Positions 2,886-58,750 of a DNA stretch of 64,000 bases are shown here, in pieces. Location: the NCBI RefSeq assembly GCF_036588685.1, contig NC_086378.1, positions 17,670,001 to 17,734,000 on the forward strand. Reading direction: 5' to 3'. A model generated the notes under the pieces. The model saw only the letters and a list, made by a program, of their open reading frames with translations, was not told where the DNA came from and did not search any database. How positions within the stretch are numbered: position 1 is the first letter of the stretch; the number at the start of each line of letters is the position of its first letter. Both the position numbers and the translations under genes were made by a program. This stretch comes from Mytilus trossulus. Its lineage: Eukaryota.

Positions 2886-3045
2886 AAATCAACGCAACAA
2901 ATCAACTAAATATTAACGTTAAATCAACGTAACAAATCAACTAAAACTTAACGTTAAAATAACGTAACAAATCAACTAAATATAAACGTTAAATCAACGT
3001 TACAAATCAACTAAATATTAACGTTAAATCAACGTAACAAATCAA
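2886..3045. repeat. 35-bp minisatellite, about 4.5 copies
   Basis: Unit aaatcaacgtaacaaatcaactaaatattaacgtt starting at 2886, 2921, 2956, 2991, 3026. Confidence 0.9.
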
Positions 3046-16065: not shown

Positions 16066-16838
16066 TCTATTATCCAGTAAGAGGAAGAAAACAACTGTGA
16101 GATTTACCTGGATAGATACAATTACTGTATATATATTGTTACTTATATGCTACACACTAAAACTTTTATTAGTTAGGAACTGAAATGTGCAAAATTTGTC
16201 TACAGTTCTAACTGATTTGTTATCAGATTTTTTTTGTGACAATATTGTCTTTTCAAGCTCACATGCCAGTGGTATACAGGTCAAGTGAGTAGCCATTTTT
16301 ATAGATTGGCATCTGATTTCGTCGTCCGTAGTCTGTTTAATTAAAATAGTTATCAAATGTACCATGCTTATAAATGAATACGCCAGACGCGCGTGTCGTC
16401 TACATAAGACTCATCGGTGACATTCAGATCAAACAAGTTAGAAAGCTACACAAGTACAATGTTAAAGAGCTTTCATGACCCAAAAGTCAAAAATAAGTAT
16501 TGCCAAATACTGCTATGGTAATATATGACTAGGATAAGAAAGATCCTAAGTTTTCGAATAAGTCATAGTTTTACAAATAAATTTATACATCTAAAAAAGA
16601 AGATGTGGTATGATTGCCAATGAGACAACTATCCACAAAAGACCAAAATGATACAAACATTAACAATTGTAGGTCACCGTACGGCCTTCAACAATTAGCA
16701 AAGCCAATACCGCATATAGTCAGCTATAAAAAGCCCCGATAAGACAATGTAAAACAATTTAAGCGAGAAAACTAACGGCCTTATTTATGTAAAAAAAGTG
16801 AAGGAAAAACAAATATGTAACACATAAACAAACGACAA

Positions 16839-16945
16839 CCACTGAATTACAGGCTCTTGACTTGGGACAGGCACATACATAAATAATGTGGCGGGGTTAA
16901 ACATGTTAGTGGGATCCCAACCCTCCCCCTAACCTGGGACAGTGG
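16839..16945 (-). ncRNA. Twister ribozyme, type P5 (subfamily 1; one P4 mismatch)
   Basis: Same core as 30245-30350, except the P4 3' strand is CAAG instead of CAGG. Confidence 0.65.
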
Positions 16946-17178
16946 TTTAACAGTACAACATAATAACGAACTATTAAAATCAGTTGAAAAAGGCTTAACT
17001 CATCAGATAGACAAAAAATAAAAGTGGACGTGGCCGGGTACTTATACATCCCGACACAAAAAGACACAATGAACAGATCTGAGAGTACTCGCAGTTATCT
17101 GACAGCTAGTTCAAAGCCATTAACAACTAATTAAAAAATCATGCCTCTAAGACAAAGCAACCAATCCGTACACATCCA

Positions 17179-18569: not shown

Positions 18570-19192
18570 TCATACAACAGTTGTTGGCATGACACGGGTT
18601 ATGTTCTTCTCATATATGTTATGATGGTATGATACTAAACCCCTAACAGGAAGGATTGTGCCTGATGTTCATATGATGAAATCATCATCTTTCAGTCAGT
18701 TTAATTGAAGTCTGGAGCTGGCATGTCAGTTAACTGCTAGTAGTCTGTTGTTATTTATGTATTATTGTCATTTTTTTGGTTACATCTTCTGACATCAGAC
18801 TCGGACTTCTCTTGAACTGAATTTTAATGTGCGTATTGTTATGCATTTACTTTTCTACATTGGTTAGAGGTATAGGGGGAGGGTTGAGATCTCACAAACA
18901 TGTTTAACCCCACCGCAATTTTGCGCCTGTCCCAAGTCAGGAGCCTCTGGCCTTTGCAAGTCTTGTATTATTTTAATTTTGGTTTCTTGTGTACAATTTG
19001 GAAATTAGTATGGCGTTCATTATCACAGAACAAGTATATATTTGTTTAGGGGCCAGCTGAAGGACGCCTCCGGGTGCGGGAATTTTTCGCTACATTGAAG
19101 ACCTAGGCCTGTTGGTGACCTTCTACTGTTTTTTTTTAATTGGTCGGGTTGTTGTCTCTTTGACACATTCCCCATTTCCATTCTCAATTTTA
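18570..19192 (+). mobile_element. Twister-bearing dispersed repeat, subfamily 2
   Basis: Related copies at about 28580-28972, 47945-48090 and 58078-58315 (inverted); fixed end ...ccattctcaatttt. Confidence 0.8.
18862..18952 (+). ncRNA. Twister ribozyme, type P5 (subfamily 2)
   Basis: GGGG-GA-GGG ... T^AA-CCC-CACC-[GCA attt TGC]-G-CCTG-TCCC-AAGT-CAGG, closed by GGTTAGAGGT/GCCTCTGGCC; predicted cut 18905/18906. Confidence 0.8.
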
Positions 19193-19199
19193 GTAATAT

Positions 19200-20020
19200 T
19201 TATTTAGCTTTTAATCTACTTATAACAAAGGCAATATTTATACCAATAAAAACAATATTAAATGATCTTATCACAGTGTTGAATAGGTAACCTTTAAGAA
19301 TAAGTTTATTAAGAGGAGCAACAAGTTCACATGGATCATTTCTAAATTTCCGGGCACGGTTAACAACATTTCCGTAAAAATAAGGATGTGCTATCCCGTT
19401 TGAAATAAGTTTTCTACAGGTAGAACCAAACTTCAAAACCAAATCTTTATATCTAAGGAAAAATTTAGTAAAGGTTTTAAGTAATTTATGGTAACGATAT
19501 CCCTGGTTTAATAATTTACCAGTGATACATAGGTTGCGTTCGTTAAAATCAAAAACGTCACAACAGACACGGGCATAGCGAACAATTTGTGAAATATAAA
19601 CACCGTAAGATGGTGCCAAAGGAACATCACCATCTAAAAATGGAAAATTAACAATAGGGAACGAAAAATCATCTCTTTTGTCGTAAATTTTAGTGTGTAG
19701 TTTCCCGTTTAAAACAGAAATATCTAAATCCAGGAAAGGACAGTTATTACCGAATACATTTGATTTATTTAAAGTAAGTTCCTTGGGGTAAATTGCAGCA
19801 GTATATTGAGAAAATTCTTGATAATTTAACGAAAAAGTATCATCAAGATAACGGTCAGTGTTGTTAAATTTATCAATTAAATGCAATTTCGACGGGTCTT
19901 TACTGAGTTTAGTCATAATCTGTGATTCGTAACAGTACAAAAACAAGTCTACTATTAAAGGGGCACAATTAGTGCCCATGGGGATACCTACAACCTGCCG
20001 ATAAATTTTGTTGTCGAAAC
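19200..20020 (-). mobile_element. Penelope-like element RT, 5'-truncated
   Basis: VGIPMGTNCAP..DLFLY, RYLDD, FLDL, YDKRDDF.F.IVNFPFL, YGVYISQ..RYAR; open for 259 aa. Confidence 0.85.
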
Positions 20021-22634: not shown

Positions 22635-24169
22635 TACAATTGCAGGACAAGATTCTAAGTTAAGACATGCATTCTTGGTTTGAAAGCAAGAATGTTACTG
22701 TTTAGCAATCATGTATAAAGGAAAACAACCTTTTGTTTGAAATTTGCATTACATTTTGTTTGTGGAATATATGCTTATGATGTAATATCAATAATACATA
22801 TATTTTTGTTGTTTAAAATACATGTGCATATAGTTTAAAATTTTTATTTTCGTAATAAAAATTGAAATGCTTGCTTTAAGTGTCTTGAGAGGGTGTGGAC
22901 TAACCCGGGAACAATGTGGTATTTTATCAACATATATTTTTGCATACAAATTGAAATGAAAATATAAAATTACCAAAAGAACATCTGGCTTTAACGTCCT
23001 AAGCCCTCGGTAAATCTCGTTTTATTTTATTTGGGCACAAAGAGTGCTTCAGCTATCTACGACGATGTTATTTTCGTTGCTAGTCAAGTAGTATTTTGTC
23101 AATAGATAAATATTTTTTTTCTATGTAGAATCCTTTAAATATTAAACATAGGAATAAATTCATTAAACCTAAATTTCTATCATCCACTATTCTGGAAAAC
23201 TGTATATGATAAGTGCAAAGGGGGAAACACTTTAACTAACTGCTCGAAACCAAAAAGAAACAGTTCCTATAAAAAAGAAGATGTGGTATGTTTGCCAATG
23301 AGACAACTATCCACAAGAGACCAAAATGACACAGACATTTAAAACAACTGTAGGTCACAATACGGCCTTAAACAATGAGCAAATTCTATACCGCAAAGAC
23401 AGATATAAAAGGCCCCGATATGACAATGTAAAACAATTCAAACGAGAAACACGTTATTTGTAAAAAAAAAAAAATAACAAAAAACAAAAATGTAATACAT
23501 AAACAAACGACAACCACTGAATTACATGATCCTGACTTGGGACAGGCACATACAGAAATAATGTGGCAGGGTTAAACATGTTAGCGAGATCTCATTCCTC
23601 CCTCTAACCTGGAACAGTGGTATAACAATACAACATAAGAACAATAAAAATTAGTTGAAAAAGGCTTTACATGTGTAAAATGTACTTGTATCATTGCTTA
23701 TGTTAATCTTAACATGCACAATAAACAGCTGAAAGTACATTAGAAGCATGATTTTTATCAATGCAAACTATCTTTCCTGGTTCTTTATGACAAACGCGGT
23801 GATTGGTTGTTTCCGTCAGGATTCAAAGAGAAAACTAGCGGCCTGGTTTATGCCAATGAAACAATAAACTAGAAACGGAATCAATAAGATTATTCATTAT
23901 TCTTGTTTCTTATATAAATGAGAATCGATTGTTTCCTATATGAAACTACTGGATATTTCTTAACAAACATTTATTCATATTTTTATTTGTAAATTTTGAT
24001 CTAAATATCGATCATGGTGTTATGGCACCTCGATTTTTGCAAAAATGAATTGATTCATGTGTCACTATATTTTTATTACAGATTAAGAATAATGCAGTTG
24101 CAGACTATCAAAAGTTGTTATTATTTATTGGTTTTTTTGGTGTTTTTTTTAATAATTTCTAATAAATTA

Positions 24170-30073: not shown

Positions 30074-30244
30074 CTATAACATATATGTAGAATCGTTGCA
30101 TATTTTTCAAAATTATTTAAAGTAACCATTTTATATAAAGGAACCATTTTATATAAAAGATTCCACTTGTATGTTTTGTCTATCTGATGAGTTAAGCCTT
30201 TTTCAACTGATTTTTATAGCTTGTTCTTATGTTGTACTGTTATA

Positions 30245-30350
30245 CCACTGTCCCAGGTTAGGGGAGGGTTGGGATCCCGTTAACACGTTTAACCCCGCCA
30301 CATTATTTATGTATGTGCCTGTCCCAAGTCAGGAGCCTGTAATTCAGTGG
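30245..30350 (+). ncRNA. Twister ribozyme, type P5 (subfamily 1, core intact)
   Basis: CCACTG..AGGTT a GGG-GA-GGG ... T^AA-CCC-CGCC-[ACAT..ATGT]-G-CCTG-TCCC-AAGT-CAGG-AGCCT..CAGTGG; predicted cut 30290/30291. Confidence 0.8.
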
Positions 30351-32493
30351 TTGTCGTTTGTTAATGTGTAACATATTTGTTTTCGTTCATTTTTTTTACT
30401 TAAATAAGGCCGTTAGTTTTATCGTTTGAATTGTCTTACATTGTCTTATCGGGGCCTTTTATAGCTGACTATGCGGTATGTGCTTTGTTCATTGTTGAAG
30501 GCCGTACGGTGGCCTATAGTAGTTAATGTTTGTGTCATTTTTGTCTTTTGTGGATAGTTGTCTCATTGGCAATCATACCACATCTTCTTTTTTAAATTGT
30601 ATCAAATTTGTGTGCACACTGACGTTTTTGTGAAAACATTTAACAACAACTTTTGAGTTATTTCTCATTCAAAACACTGGAAAAGAAGTATTTTTATAGT
30701 TTAAGTTGTTACATCGCAGTACATGTTCGTAATATTTTAATCCATCGAAACAATATTATTTCCACTTTGCACGTGTTACTTTTTTAAATGACATTTTTAA
30801 TTTATGGACAAAGTATAAGAAAAGAGCAACTTTTTTTACTAAGTTCAAGCAAATGTGTCGAACTATTAAAAAACTATAAAGTGCGACTGACTTTTACAAA
30901 GCTATTTCAATATAAAATTACAAAAGTACTTAAAGTGGCTGGGGCGTCTTAATTAAAACTGACAGAATGTTTTGATAACTTGTCAAAATGAAGCTTTATC
31001 ATGCTTTTTTTCAAAACTGTATTAAAAAGTATGGGTCATAGGACTTTTTTTCACGGTATAGGTTGCGCAAAATTGTCAGATTTTGTATAGATTATTCATG
31101 TAAAATCAAATTGTGTGTGATAAAACGAAAACGTACTATAAGAACTTTAAGATGAAATGTGAGAATATTGCTCTTATAACATGCTTTCAGACAAGCAAAA
31201 GAAAAGATGGGGTCCCTGAATTTGTTTTCTGGCTTCATATCGAAATATCTGCTTATCTAAAATCCAAGATGAAGGAAGACACCCGAGCCTCCTTAAGTCA
31301 GAGGAAAATTCAAAACGGAATGTCCGTAATCAAATGGCAAAATCAAAAGCTCAAACACATCAAACGAATAGAAAACAACTGTCATATTCCTGACATGGAA
31401 ATTATAACTGTAAAATGATTGATTAAATAGAGAAACAAGAGATCGAAGCTATGAGCGCAAATCACGGCCGTCGCTTTTTCAATTGACTGAGTCAGACTTG
31501 GTGAACATTCTTTTGTAACGTTGAATGATCACATCGTACTTTTTCGAGATATTTAAACTGTGGGGTCGACAAAAAATCTAAACCATAATCAAATAACATG
31601 AATACATGTATAAGCAGACGACTAAACCTTGAGTTTTTTAATGATGAATACTTAAACATTATGTTTTTCATTTAATGCACATGCTCAAATAACACAATAT
31701 TCGCATACCAGTACCAAAATACAGAAATACTGAGTTTATATGTTGTGTTGACTATCATATCATTTATGTGTGCGTGTATCTATGGTGATTGTTCTTGTGT
31801 GTGTTTGTGCTGTTTTTGGTCAAGTTGTGTAGTCTTTCAGAGATATTTTAGATATTGTCATCAAGCGGGGAGATTGCCTATTCGTTATTCAAAGTTTTAA
31901 CTCACCATGTTGTCCTTAAAATGTCATGCAACAAGTCAGGAGTATGACAGTTGTGATCCAATAGTTCGTTTCAATAAGTATTCTCTTGTTTCTTTTACGT
32001 TTTTTCTCACTTAAGAGTCCCTATTGTTCATTGTTTTCCTATTATAGTTGATGTGTTTTAGTTTGTTCAGTAAAGTTTATGCAGGTGCATGAGAAGAAAG
32101 GTATTCTACATTAAATTCAACACACAAAATTTATCATCTGCTAGTTATTTGTTTTATTTGATATATTCATTTAGAATCTTAGGCGACAACCCCCCCCCCC
32201 CCCCCCCCCCATTCTAAAATGTCAGCAACAAGTACGATGCGATAACTCAGCTTTTCATAGCGTACACCTCATTTGACCCAGTTCGTTGCTATAATCTGTA
32301 CTCGTCAAGAAATTGTCTCGTCCAAACTGTTTGAAAATGATTAAAATTCATTCCAGACAAAGGAAACATCTAACCATCTAGCAATACCTTATTGAATTCA
32401 AAAGTAAATTTAGATTTGTACTTTCACAAGTTATGATTCAAATAATTTCTGAGTATTTGAAACTCCGGTACTTAAATATAGACTTAGAAATAC

Positions 32494-32612: not shown

Positions 32613-33190
32613 CTATAATTTAAAAAATAAGATTCCTGCGTATAGAGAATATTGTGTATTTAGCATCAGTATGGCTCCTCAAACCGTGCTGTATATCGTG
32701 ATTATGAGAGCCAGGACAACAGTTTTCCGAACAATTCTTAAAAAAACCAGATATAAAATCCGTATAATGAGGATCCCGCTAACATATTTAACCCCGCCAC
32801 ATTATTTATGTATGTGCCTGTCCCAAGTCAGGAGCCTGTAAATTCAGTGGTTGTCGTTTGTTTATGTGTAACATATTTTTTCTCGTTCACTTTTTTACAA
32901 AAATAAGGCCGTTAGTGTTCTTGTTTGAATTGTTTTACAATTTCTTATAGGTGCCTTGTTTTTCTGATTATGTGGTATGGTTTTTGCTCATTGTTGAAGG
33001 CCGTACGATGACCTATAATTGTTAATGTCTGTGTTATTTTGGTCTTTTGTGGATAGTTGTCTCATAAGCAATCATACCACATCTTTTTTTTATATTATAA
33101 AGAAATTGTGTACCCGTTTGATATTAAGACTGAATTAAATTTCTCAATAAATCATTTACAGGTATGTTAAATGTATTAAGTCTTACTTAC

Positions 33191-55769: not shown

Positions 55770-56270
55770 AGATATAGGAAGATGTGGTGTGAGTGCCAAT
55801 GAGACAACTCTCCTTCCAAATAACAATTTAAAAATTAAACCATTATGGGTTAAAGTACGACCTTCAACACGGAGCCTTGGCTCACACCGAACAACAAGCT
55901 ATAAAGGGCCCCAAAATTACTAGTGTAAAACCATTCAAACGGGAAAACCAACGGTCTTATCTATATAAACAAAACGAGAAACTAGAAACACGTATATATT
56001 ACATAAACAAACGACAACTACTGTACATCAGATTCCTGACTTAGGACAGGTGCAAACATTTGCAGCGGGATTAAACGTTTTAATGGATCCAAACCTTCTC
56101 CCTTTTTCTGAAACAATAGCATAACATCACAACATAGAAAAACATACGATAAAATATCAATTGGCAGACTTAACTCAATCTAAAAACGTATGATTACACA
56201 ATGAACGAATAAATTTGATCTGCGATATCTGAATACAAATGCACAGTTAATTAAATATTAGAGACAAACA
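55770..56270 (-). mobile_element. Twister-bearing dispersed repeat, subfamily 3
   Basis: Same layout as subfamily 1 but divergent; short terminal copy at about 15572-15645. Confidence 0.8.
56018..56119 (-). ncRNA. Twister ribozyme, type P5 (subfamily 3)
   Basis: TCAGA..GGGA-GA-AGG ... T^AA-TCC-CGCT-[GCAAA tg TTTGC]-A-CCTG-TCCT-AAGT-CAGG-aa-TCTGA; predicted cut 56073/56072. Confidence 0.82.
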
Positions 56271-57564: not shown

Positions 57565-58750
57565 CTAAGTTTTATTAAATAGAATAAAAATATTAGTCTT
57601 GGAACTTTAATCTTGGTTTTGCAGAGTATCTGGTAGAATGATAAAACTATAGTAGACACTAACAGATGGCAAAATAATAAACAAAAACAGACAATCAGAT
57701 TTTGGTTAAAGTGAAAAAGAATAAAAGCAAGAAAAAAGTTATCCAGACATAAGATTCAGTGTAACAAAATCAATCTAAAATTACGAATGAGTAAATGGAA
57801 TTTGAAAGAATATGAAGTTTTTTTCCATAGATCAATCAGCTGTATTAATTATTCTAGTAGATAACTTCTAGAACTAGAAATGTTTGCAGGGTCATAATCC
57901 GTCTCCTTAACAATCAAACATATCCGTAATTTTATCTTGACTCATCAATGCTTCCCTTCCTTTCACTTTGTATTTTATTTGGCTTTTTTTACATTTTTGA
58001 TTCGAGTATCACTGATGTGTACTTCGAACACAAAGTTATACGGAAATTCTGGTATATATGATGAGATTGTATAAATCTAATAAAATTGAGAATGGATATG
58101 GGGAAAATGTCAAAGAGGCAACAGTTCAGTGAACATTGACGTCATACTAAACTCCAAAACATATAACTGAACTCAAACGAAGAAAAACTACAAGAGTAAC
58201 AAAGACAAGAAGCTCTTGACTTGGGAAAGGCGCAAAAATCCCGTGGGGTTAAACATGTTTTGGAGATCTCCCCCCCCCCAGTAAACCTCTAGCAAATGTA
58301 CAATAAAGAAACCCATATCAATAGAGGTTTCCTGAACTGGTATGTATCAGGTGCAATTGGTATGTAACACAACCTTGCATGCTGTTATTGAGGTGTCGTT
58401 TAAAATATGTTATTATTGTATTCATCAATATGAAATTTAAAAAATCGAATTGCATATTTGTGATAAAAACCTTAATCTTTTATTTATTTACGATTTCACT
58501 GCTTCTAGAACACTTTGTTTGTGTTTTATACAATAATATTTATTGTATGCACAAGGAGAATGAACCAAACAGTCCTTACTGGTATTGAGTTGTTTGGACT
58601 TTTAGATTCTGAATATAGGTTTTGCGTTTCTGTATATCTTGGTGATTTTTTTTTTTTTTTTTGTGTATTTTCAGAAAATAAAATAGAATAAAGAATTTGT
58701 TCTGATATTTGAATAGAATTTGGAATAATAAGAAAATATATATTCATAAT

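What the first reader, a model, noticed from the sequence alone, without database searches (positions are those of the whole stretch)
30245..30350. Circularly permuted (type-P5) twister ribozyme in the most abundant dispersed repeat
Seen: the repeat contains T^AA-CCC-CGCC-hairpin-G-CCTG-TCCC-AAGT-CAGG, preceded by GGG-GA-GGG and closed by AGGTT/AGCCT and CCACTG/CAGTGG. Established: this is the twister core (UAA cleavage loop, P2, P3, P4 with loop UCCC-AAG, catalytic G of GA, pseudoknots T1 and T2) known from rice and Schistosoma twisters. Here the GA-GGG half lies 5', so the molecule opens at P5. Inference: a high-copy non-coding element family in this genome carries a self-cleaving twister. 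At least 6 recognisable copies (16839, 18862, 23514, 30245, 32771 truncated, 56018) plus decayed ones occur in 64 kb. I do not know of a description of this in bivalves, but could not search.
Basis: partly seen in the sequence, partly recalled or inferred. Interest (0 to 1): 0.92.

Follow-up and report, generated by a model that had tools for sequence, protein, structure and literature searches.

The report
Twister ribozyme fold in Naiad retroelements
The abundant repeat is the tail end of a Naiad-type Penelope-like retrotransposon. It carries a rearranged twister self-cleaving RNA fold, kept by compensating base changes in many related elements, although this element group was described as lacking a ribozyme.

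Summary
The motif is at 30245-30350 as described, and five further copies are in the window. Rfam's twister models align to it end to end but score only 14-22 bits (cut-off 37.6). The helix next to the cut site (P1) is not canonical, and both optional hairpins, P3 and P5, are present.

Covariation supports the fold. In 29 distinct relatives from marine metagenome contigs, 91% of pair cells are paired and 25 of 28 pairs change on both sides. This includes both pseudoknots, which were not in my search model.

The repeat is not a stand-alone non-coding family. It is the 5'-truncated tail of a retroelement of about 3 kb or more with an N-terminal GIY-YIG nuclease, a DKA motif and a reverse transcriptase. 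That is the Naiad architecture, with probable selenocysteine codons and a SECIS-like hairpin. The twister lies in the 3'UTR on the coding strand.

Naiads were published as lacking hammerheads. No paper in the searched library holds both Naiad and twister. P1 is replaced by two conserved loop-less palindromes, as in the dimeric hammerheads of other Penelope-like elements.

The scan had already noted this fold on other pieces of this genome.

The parts
30245..30350 (+). Family-A copy of the twister-like motif (the finding). 5' half: P5 strand 30254-57, P2' plus GA 30261-65, T1 GGG 30266-68. P1-replacing segment 30269-89 with palindrome GGGATCCC 30271-78. Cut between U30290 and A30291. P2 30293-96, T2 GC 30297-98, P3 30299-303 with 30313-17, P4 30318-21 with 30330-33, L4 TCCCAAGT 30322-29, P5 strand 30336-39. 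The G run is one base shorter than in the family.
   Evidence: (125.4 bits with R1)
30162..30609 (+). The whole 5'-truncated family-A tail that holds the motif. It has a sharp 3' end (...CTTCTTTTTT) followed by AT-rich target sequence.
16839..16945 (-). Family-A motif with the intact GGGG-GA-GGG. It lies in tail copy 16579-17028.
   Evidence: Rfam Twister-P5, positions 1-58, 14.3 bits; 130 bits
23514..23620 (-). Decayed family-A motif: P2 has mismatches and T1 reads GGA. It lies in tail copy 23270-23667.
32747..32850 (+). Family-A tail truncated inside the ribozyme. The 5' half (P2', GA, T1) is missing, so this copy cannot fold. Copy 32771-33096.
18858..18956 (+). Family-B motif: P5 GAGG/CCTC, P3 CGCA/TGCG, T2 A-U, palindromes TGAGATCTCA and AAACATGTTT. 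It is within 2-3% of about 40 other genomic copies.
56018..56125 (-). Family-C motif: P2 TCCC/GGGA, T1 AGG with CCT, P5 TCAGA/TCTGA. Best Rfam score in the window.
   Evidence: (Twister-P5, 21.8 bits, E 0.0095)
58200..58298 (-). Decayed B-like motif.
   Evidence: (41.8 bits)
19635..19964 (-). Fragment of the reverse-transcriptase ORF of the same element kind (92% identical to the family-A query over residues 2-111).
   Evidence: G000:C6:17689635-17689964, converted to window coordinates

Best explanation
The motif is a twister-class RNA in the type-P5 circular permutation, with P3 present. It sits on the coding strand in the 3'UTR of Naiad-type Penelope-like retroelements, about 300-450 nt after the stop codon and about 320-370 nt before the 3' end. 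The window's abundant 450-bp repeat is the 5'-truncated tail of such elements.

Shown: the fold and its two pseudoknots are kept by selection across several families in this genome and in related elements from other samples. The catalytic-core letters (U^AA, GA, CCAAG) stay fixed while the helices change.

Inferred:
- Master copies self-cleave between U and A (30290/30291 in this copy).
- The ribozyme does the job that hammerheads are thought to do in the pseudo-LTRs of other Penelope-like elements. That job is cutting tandem or read-through transcripts to unit length, possibly as a dimer, because the usual P1 is replaced by loop-less palindromes.
For: Core match:
- Rfam Twister-P5 aligns over positions 1-58 of 58 to two copies.
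- Twister-P1 aligns to the UAA-P2-GC-P3-P4 half.

Covariation in this genome:
- 91.3% of pair cells are paired, against 32-53% when partners are slid.
- 18 of 28 pairs change on both sides; 0 of 500 shuffles reach this.

Covariation in 29 distinct sequences from metagenome contigs:
- 91.4% of cells are paired (63% shuffled, 38-46% slid).
- 25 of 28 pairs and 242 cells change on both sides (shuffled 78 cells).
- The first T2 pair occurs as C-G 12, A-U 8, G-U 5.
- T1 occurs as GGG/CCC, AGG/CCU, GGA/UCC, AGA/UCU and GGU/ACC.
- GA is present in 32 of 34 sequences.

Linkage to the element:
- All 34 matches in 80 metagenome loci lie on the reverse-transcriptase strand.
- 30 of 49 loci with at least 500 nt of room have the motif 69-993 nt downstream of the reverse-transcriptase match.
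- The motif is the best-conserved stretch of the 3'UTR between families A and B: 73-83% identity against 20-67% elsewhere.

The minimum-energy fold reproduces P2-P5.
Against: - No Rfam twister model reaches its gathering score (best 21.8 against 37.6). In a 68-kb search the twister models give nothing at E 0.1 or better.
- There is no canonical P1 next to the cut site.
- T2 uses G-U in family A.
- The A-rich junction before P2' is reduced to one A in family A.
- Folding energy is no better than shuffles (z -0.20).
- None of 25 unselected tail copies begins at the predicted cut site. Cut RNA is therefore not the usual template.
- No RNA data could be obtained.
- About a third of related reverse-transcriptase loci with room show no motif.
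Confidence: 0.72

Rival explanations
1. The RNA keeps the twister fold but no longer cuts. It serves as a structured 3'UTR module, for example a handle that the element's reverse transcriptase or a dimerisation partner recognises.
For: P1 is missing and is replaced by palindromes. Rfam scores are sub-threshold. Copies keep the sequence on both sides of the cut site, and none of 25 starts at it. Family D has a weakened T1 but is still amplified.
Against: The letters that matter only for catalysis (GA, U^AA, the CCAAG loop) stay fixed while helices vary freely. A pure structural handle would not need them. Twisters without P1 still cut, if slowly (PMC8501958). Natural twisters tolerate many imperfections (PMC11662667).
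Confidence: 0.2
2. One reading: a stand-alone high-copy non-coding (SINE-like) element family that carries its own twister.
For: Most copies are short and non-coding. Family D copies all start about 8 nt before P2', which may mark a true short non-autonomous derivative.
Against: Families A and B have a sharp 3' end and ragged 5' ends. Both run upstream into reverse-transcriptase ORFs and, further up, a GIY-YIG ORF.
Confidence: 0.05
3. Chance resemblance in a GC-rich patch of a decaying repeat.
For: Weak Rfam E-values (0.5-0.8 for two copies) and an unremarkable folding energy.
Against: Compensatory changes occur in 25 of 28 pairs, pseudoknots included, in sequences from other samples. Strand and position are fixed relative to the reverse transcriptase.
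Confidence: 0.02

Closest known systems
Type-P5 twister ribozyme (Rfam RF02684; Roth et al. 2014 class)
   Same: Same order of parts (P2'-GA-GGG, then UAA-P2-GC, then the P4 hairpin with a UCCCAAG loop), the same two pseudoknots, and the same predicted U^A cut.
   Different: There is no P1 hairpin; two palindromes take its place. P3 is present as well as P5. T2 is G-U, A-U or C-G rather than C-G. The score is below Rfam's cut-off.
Twister variants at the 5' end of Perere-3 (RTE) retrotransposons of Schistosoma mansoni (Liu et al. 2021, PMC8501958)
   Same: A twister embedded in a retrotransposon on the sense strand, with a weak or absent P1. The letters after GAGGG are UUGG in both.
   Different: Those are type P1, at the extreme 5' end of a LINE, and cleavage defines the 5' end of the RNA. 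Here the motif is type P5, in the 3'UTR of a Penelope-like element, and copy ends do not pile up at the cut site.
Hammerhead ribozymes in the pseudo-LTRs of Penelope-like elements (Cervera and de la Pena 2014; reviewed in PMC6765202)
   Same: The same kind of host element and the same place near its 3' end. A palindromic, loop-less helix lies directly 5' of the cut site, which in the hammerheads is taken to mean action as dimers. The elements occur in tandem.
   Different: A different ribozyme class. No hammerhead is found here.
Naiad selenoprotein retroelements of clams (Craig et al. 2021, PMC8557442)
   Same: N-terminal GIY-YIG, KR-rich block, CxC, GxKY, DKA, in-frame TGA at conserved cysteines, SECIS in the 3'UTR, 5' truncation, AT-rich target and very high copy number.
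   Different: That paper reports no canonical ribozyme in Naiads. Here a TGA also replaces the first Cys of CxC, a position it does not list.

Membership tests
Twister ribozyme class | U^AA cleavage loop directly followed by P2 | tested here: met
   TAA then CCCC at 30290-96. UAA in 27 of 34 relatives; most of the others read CAA or UCA.
Twister ribozyme class | P2 helix between the two halves | tested here: met
   GGGG/CCCC, GGGA/UCCC, GGGC/GCCC and GUGU/ACAC. All 4 pairs change on both sides. One pair is often mismatched in one lineage.
Twister ribozyme class | P4 hairpin with a loop of the UCCCAAG type | tested here: met
   GTCCCAAGT in families A and B. The loop is GU-N-CC-AAG-(U/G)-C across most relatives. 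P4 is 98% paired.
Twister ribozyme class | Pseudoknot T1 (three bases after GA pair with three bases of the P4 loop) | tested here: met
   Five Watson-Crick combinations. 84% of cells paired and 2 of 3 pairs change on both sides. T1 was not part of the search model.
Twister ribozyme class | Pseudoknot T2 (two bases after P2 pair with the end of the P4 loop) | tested here: met
   First pair C-G 12, A-U 8, G-U 5; second pair C-G 23. Family A uses G-U where the Rfam consensus has G-C.
Twister ribozyme class | Conserved GA (catalytic guanine) between P2' and T1 | tested here: met
   GA in 32 of 34 relatives. The copy at 30245 has lost one G of the run.
Twister ribozyme class | P1 helix closing the cut site against the strand after T1 | tested here: not met
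   Rfam skips the region as a local end. It holds two loop-less palindromes instead. P1 is reported to be dispensable at reduced rate (PMC8501958).
Twister ribozyme class | Rfam gathering score for RF02684, RF03160 or the type-P3 model | tested here: not met
   Best score 21.8 bits against 37.6. Nothing at gathering threshold in the window or in the genome scan.
Twister ribozyme class | Site-specific self-cleavage | not testable with these tools
No wet assay was possible.
Naiad clade of Penelope-like elements (Craig et al. 2021) | GIY-YIG nuclease N-terminal to the reverse transcriptase | tested here: met
   CGIQYVGQTGR...EH ORF upstream on the same strand in L053 (family A), L082, L085, L090, L096, L111 and L120. 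Pfam GIY-YIG is just under its cut-off for L096 (E 4e-4, 21.1 against 22.6 bits). The commonest 2-3 kb copies are truncated and lack it.
Naiad clade of Penelope-like elements (Craig et al. 2021) | Diagnostic linker: KR-rich block, CxC, GxKF/Y, and DKA instead of DKG | tested here: met
   RNNRSHGKR..., (TGA)-N-C aligned to C-S-C of P0091, GPKY, and PADKAASNVVVV.
Naiad clade of Penelope-like elements (Craig et al. 2021) | Heavy 5' truncation, tandem copies, AT-rich (TA)n target | tested here: met
   Ragged 5' ends and a sharp 3' end followed by ATAT. Tandem tails in L046 and a tandem next copy in L082.
Naiad clade of Penelope-like elements (Craig et al. 2021) | Placement of the reverse transcriptase inside the Naiad clade on a tree with published Naiads | not tested
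   No published Naiad protein sequences were at hand.

The most novel reading that the evidence does not exclude
Naiads did not lose the ribozyme of Penelope-like elements. They swapped the hammerhead for a twister that, like the minimal hammerheads, works only as a dimer. The two loop-less palindromes that replace P1 pair between two RNAs or two tandem units. Cleavage, and perhaps template switching, would then be tied to the tandem insertions typical of these elements.
Probability: 0.3. Interest if true: 0.85.

Novelty: new variant of a known kind. Interest (0 to 1): 0.72.

Why it matters
Naiads dominate bivalve genomes. Their success without a hammerhead was used to argue that ribozymes may be mere passengers of Penelope-like elements (PMC8557442).

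If Naiads carry a twister in the same place, a self-cleaving RNA becomes a shared and independently replaced part of these elements. That points to a real role in their life cycle and gives two ribozyme classes to compare.

It also shows that the Rfam twister models miss a family with roughly 10^5 copies in one genome. In addition, it offers a natural twister with a palindromic stand-in for P1, on which to test dimer-dependent cleavage.

Tried and rejected
- Rfam at gathering threshold on the window and Rfam Twister-P5 over the genome: no hit.
- Hammerhead: a CTGATGAG box upstream of the motif has no GAAA partner and no Rfam hit. Rejected.
- SINE or MITE reading: rejected once the 5' ends proved ragged and ran into ORFs.
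- RTE-type 5' processing, as in Schistosoma: rejected, because the motif lies in the 3'UTR and 0 of 25 unselected copies start at the cut site.
- Pfam on the first 2-3 kb copies found no nuclease. It appeared only in longer copies and in relatives.
- A second model built from the relatives (R2) added only 3 loci. The most distant reverse-transcriptase loci may lack the motif or carry a form I cannot see.
Families C and D could therefore not be sampled beyond the copies already held.
- The supplements of PMC11662667 are not held, so I could not see which bivalve candidates that study listed.
- Complex prediction, structure prediction and the representative-protein search were not needed.

Full report
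**1. The observation**

From 5' to 3' they read:
- an outer stem, CCACTG;
- a P5 strand, CAGG;
- a G run followed by A and GGG;
- 21 bases without an obvious hairpin;
- T^AA, CCCC and GC;
- a hairpin, CACAT...ATGTG;
- CCTG-TCCCAAGT-CAGG;
- the P5 partner CCTG and the outer partner CAGTGG.

A 19-base core pattern with up to three mismatches occurs six times in the window and never in 100 shuffles, at exactly the six places listed.

**2. What Rfam says**

At gathering thresholds nothing in the window matches any of 4227 families. A genome-wide look with Twister-P5 also finds nothing, although only 79 of about 26,700 candidates were scored.

With permissive thresholds on short stretches:
- Twister-P1 aligns to the UAA-P2-GC-P3-P4 half of this copy (17.1 bits, E 0.5).
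- Twister-P5 aligns over all 58 model positions to 16856-16929 (14.3 bits, E 0.81).
- Twister-P5 also aligns over all 58 positions to 56035-56102 (21.8 bits, E 0.0095).

The cut-off is 37.6 bits. In both Twister-P5 alignments the P1 hairpin is skipped as a local end and P3 is charged as an insertion. The conserved single-stranded letters (GA, GGG, UAA, GC, GUCCCAAG) match. By the curated test this is not a member; by anatomy it is a twister core in the P5-open order.

**3. Families and covariation inside the genome**

Aligning the copies shows three families.
- Family A (16839, 23514, 30245, 32771) reads GGGG-GA-GGG in its intact members.
- Family B (18858) changes P5 to GAGG/CCTC, P3 to CGCA/TGCG, and the first T2 base to A, opposite the loop U.
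- Family C (56018) changes P2 to UCCC/GGGA, T1 to AGG opposite CCU, and P5 to UCAGA/UCUGA.

I built a covariance model from five copies using only the nested helices (R1).
- In the 1.3-Gb assembly it gave about 359,000 first-look candidates. This is a rough figure. The 150 scored candidates all exceeded 120 bits.
- It found 11 matches in the window.
- It found 63 matches in the window plus the loci fetched by then.

On those 63 matches (35 distinct), 91.3% of pair cells are standard pairs, against 32-53% when partners are slid by 1-3 columns. 18 of 28 pairs change on both sides, which 0 of 500 shuffles reach. The alignment was fitted to the nested helices and so leans towards them. T1 and T2 were not in the model.

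**4. What the repeat is**

The 450-bp unit has a sharp 3' end (...CTTCTTTTTT, then ATAT) but ragged 5' ends.

Longer copies run upstream for 2 kb and more at about 95% identity. They carry an ORF with reverse-transcriptase motifs: LPKLHKK, FDFSTLYTTLPH, GIPMGTNCAPL and YRYLDDIF. Pfam RVT_1 is weak, at E 0.0015.

Upstream of the reverse-transcriptase domain lie GPKY and PADKAASNVVVV. Further up, in L053 (family A) and in relatives, lies an ORF with CGIQYVGQTGR...EH, the YIG half of a GIY-YIG nuclease. Pfam GIY-YIG scores E 4e-4 for L096, just under its cut-off.

Craig et al. 2021 (PMC8557442) define Naiads by these features:
- an N-terminal GIY-YIG nuclease;
- a KR-rich block, CxC and GxKF/Y;
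- DKA in place of DKG;
- heavy 5' truncation and tandem copies;
- (TA)n targets;
- no canonical hammerhead.

All of those I could test are met.

Family B is the tail of a second such element. It has an intact 415-residue ORF stretch, and the nuclease ORF of a second copy begins about 550 nt after its tail.

The twister lies on the coding strand, about 330-370 nt after the stop codon and 320-370 nt before the 3' end.

**5. Relatives from elsewhere**

A protein search found over 3000 relatives of the reverse transcriptase. An alignment of ten of them pulled 80 loci from metagenome contigs. These loci have 35-80% protein identity to the query, and many of their record names say marine metagenome.

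R1 found 34 matches in them, every one on the reverse-transcriptase strand.
- Thirty lie 69-993 nt after the end of the reverse-transcriptase match.
- Two lie about 2.2 kb upstream of it (L117, L137), as a pseudo-LTR would; L096 also has a weak, cut-off match at its 5' end besides its downstream one.
- Of 49 loci with at least 500 nt of room, 30 have the downstream motif.

On these 29 distinct sequences:
- 91.4% of cells are paired (63% in shuffles, 38-46% slid);
- 25 of 28 pairs and 242 cells change on both sides (78 cells in shuffles);
- the covariation score is 0.69, against 0.20 shuffled and 0.11 slid.

The pseudoknots, absent from the model, covary:
- T1 appears as GGG/CCC, AGG/CCU, GGA/UCC, AGA/UCU and GGU/ACC.
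- The first T2 pair appears as C-G, A-U and G-U.

GA is present in 32 of 34 sequences, and most have UAA.

Fixed catalytic letters with free helices is what selection for a working twister predicts. Between families A and B the motif is the best-conserved part of the 3'UTR.

A second model built from the relatives added only three loci. Rfam's twister models see none of these sequences at E 0.1 in a 68-kb search. That may be why they have gone unnoticed.

**6. What is odd**

The 20-25 bases between T1 and the cut site do not form the usual P1 hairpin. They hold two perfect palindromes with no loop.
- The first is 8-10 bases long and has about twenty different sequences across lineages.
- The second abuts or includes the cut site.

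42 of 51 distinct segments have a perfect palindrome of 8 or more bases (10% of shuffles). 33 of 51 have two palindromes of 6 or more bases (6% of shuffles).

A plain hairpin would not need its central four bases to be self-complementary. Pairing between two RNAs would need it, and so would a DNA-level palindrome.

The hammerheads of other Penelope-like elements have just such a palindromic, very short stem III directly 5' of their cut site. They are thought to cut as dimers, helped by the tandem layout (PMC6765202).

Predicted dimers of four of the present RNAs lie 9-18 kcal/mol below two monomers. This only shows that a dimer is plausible.

**7. Does it cut, and what for?**

I could not test cleavage.

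Two indirect points weigh against efficient cutting of the RNA that gets copied:
- Copies keep both sides of the cut site.
- None of 25 unselected tails (15 of family A, 10 of family B) starts at it.

The same is true of hammerheads in Penelope-like elements.

Twisters lacking P1 still cut, slowly (PMC8501958). A large screen found natural twisters tolerant of imperfections (PMC11662667).

My reading, at about 0.7, is that master copies self-cleave. The likely role is the one proposed for the hammerheads: cutting tandem or read-through transcripts to unit length, perhaps as dimers. The main rival, at about 0.2, is a conserved but inactive fold used as a 3'UTR handle.

**8. What is known**

- Twisters in retrotransposons are known from the 5' end of Perere-3 (RTE) in Schistosoma (PMC8501958), and were mentioned for RTEs in PMC7761336.
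- Bivalves appear in a list of groups with predicted twisters (PMC11662667). Its supplements are not held.
- Naiads were reported to lack canonical hammerheads, and the authors drew the inference that ribozymes may be dispensable passengers.
- No paper in the searchable library holds both 'Naiad' and 'twister', and none of the 17 papers holding 'Penelope-like' and 'twister' is, by title or abstract, about such a link (only some were opened).
- Earlier notes of this scan on other pieces of this genome reached the same reading. I took the Naiad lead from them and tested it here.

**9. Verdict**

The twister reading is supported by strong covariation but fails Rfam's cut-off and lacks P1. The 'non-coding repeat' reading is wrong. 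The link to Naiads appears to be unpublished. Cleavage is the open experiment.

Noticed in passing
L034, L037, L047, L050, L054 (family-A copies); L031:7979-8045; L089:3095-3159; L105:3207-3269: The host ORF has in-frame TGA codons at conserved cysteines. One replaces the first Cys of the CxC motif in 5 of 5 copies. Another lies 8 residues after DKA, and a further stop lies before the YIG motif. A SECIS-like hairpin lies between the stop codon and the twister (23-31 bits, cut-off 35). This fits the clam selenoprotein Naiads of Craig et al. 2021, but the CxC position is not among those they list.
   Followed up: partly
window 30269-30289 and the same segment in all families; L085-L147: Two loop-less perfect palindromes replace P1. 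Their sequence changes freely while their symmetry is kept (42 of 51 segments against 10% of shuffles). This suggests RNA dimerisation or a DNA-level palindrome.
   Followed up: partly
L040:2658-2768; genome places listed: A fourth family (D) has a weakened T1 (loop TACTAAGT). About 39 near-identical copies all begin 7-8 nt before P2', at the first base of the P5 strand. This may be a short non-autonomous derivative that starts with the ribozyme.
   Followed up: partly
L046:2450-2556 and 2931-3037; G000:C12:5701860 and 5702249; L082: Tails occur in head-to-tail tandem, 389-481 nt apart. In L082 the nuclease ORF of a second full copy begins about 550 nt after the tail of the first. Two cuts in such arrays would release unit-length RNAs, as in retrozymes.
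   Followed up: no
window 19635-19964 (-): A reverse-transcriptase fragment of the same element kind lies about 700 nt from the family-B tail at 18858 but on the opposite strand. It is therefore a separate, or inverted, insertion.
   Followed up: no
P0114: One close relative of the reverse transcriptase is filed in a public database under a bacterial symbiont bin (Candidatus Thiodiazotropha endolucinida). This is probably host clam DNA binned by mistake.
   Followed up: no
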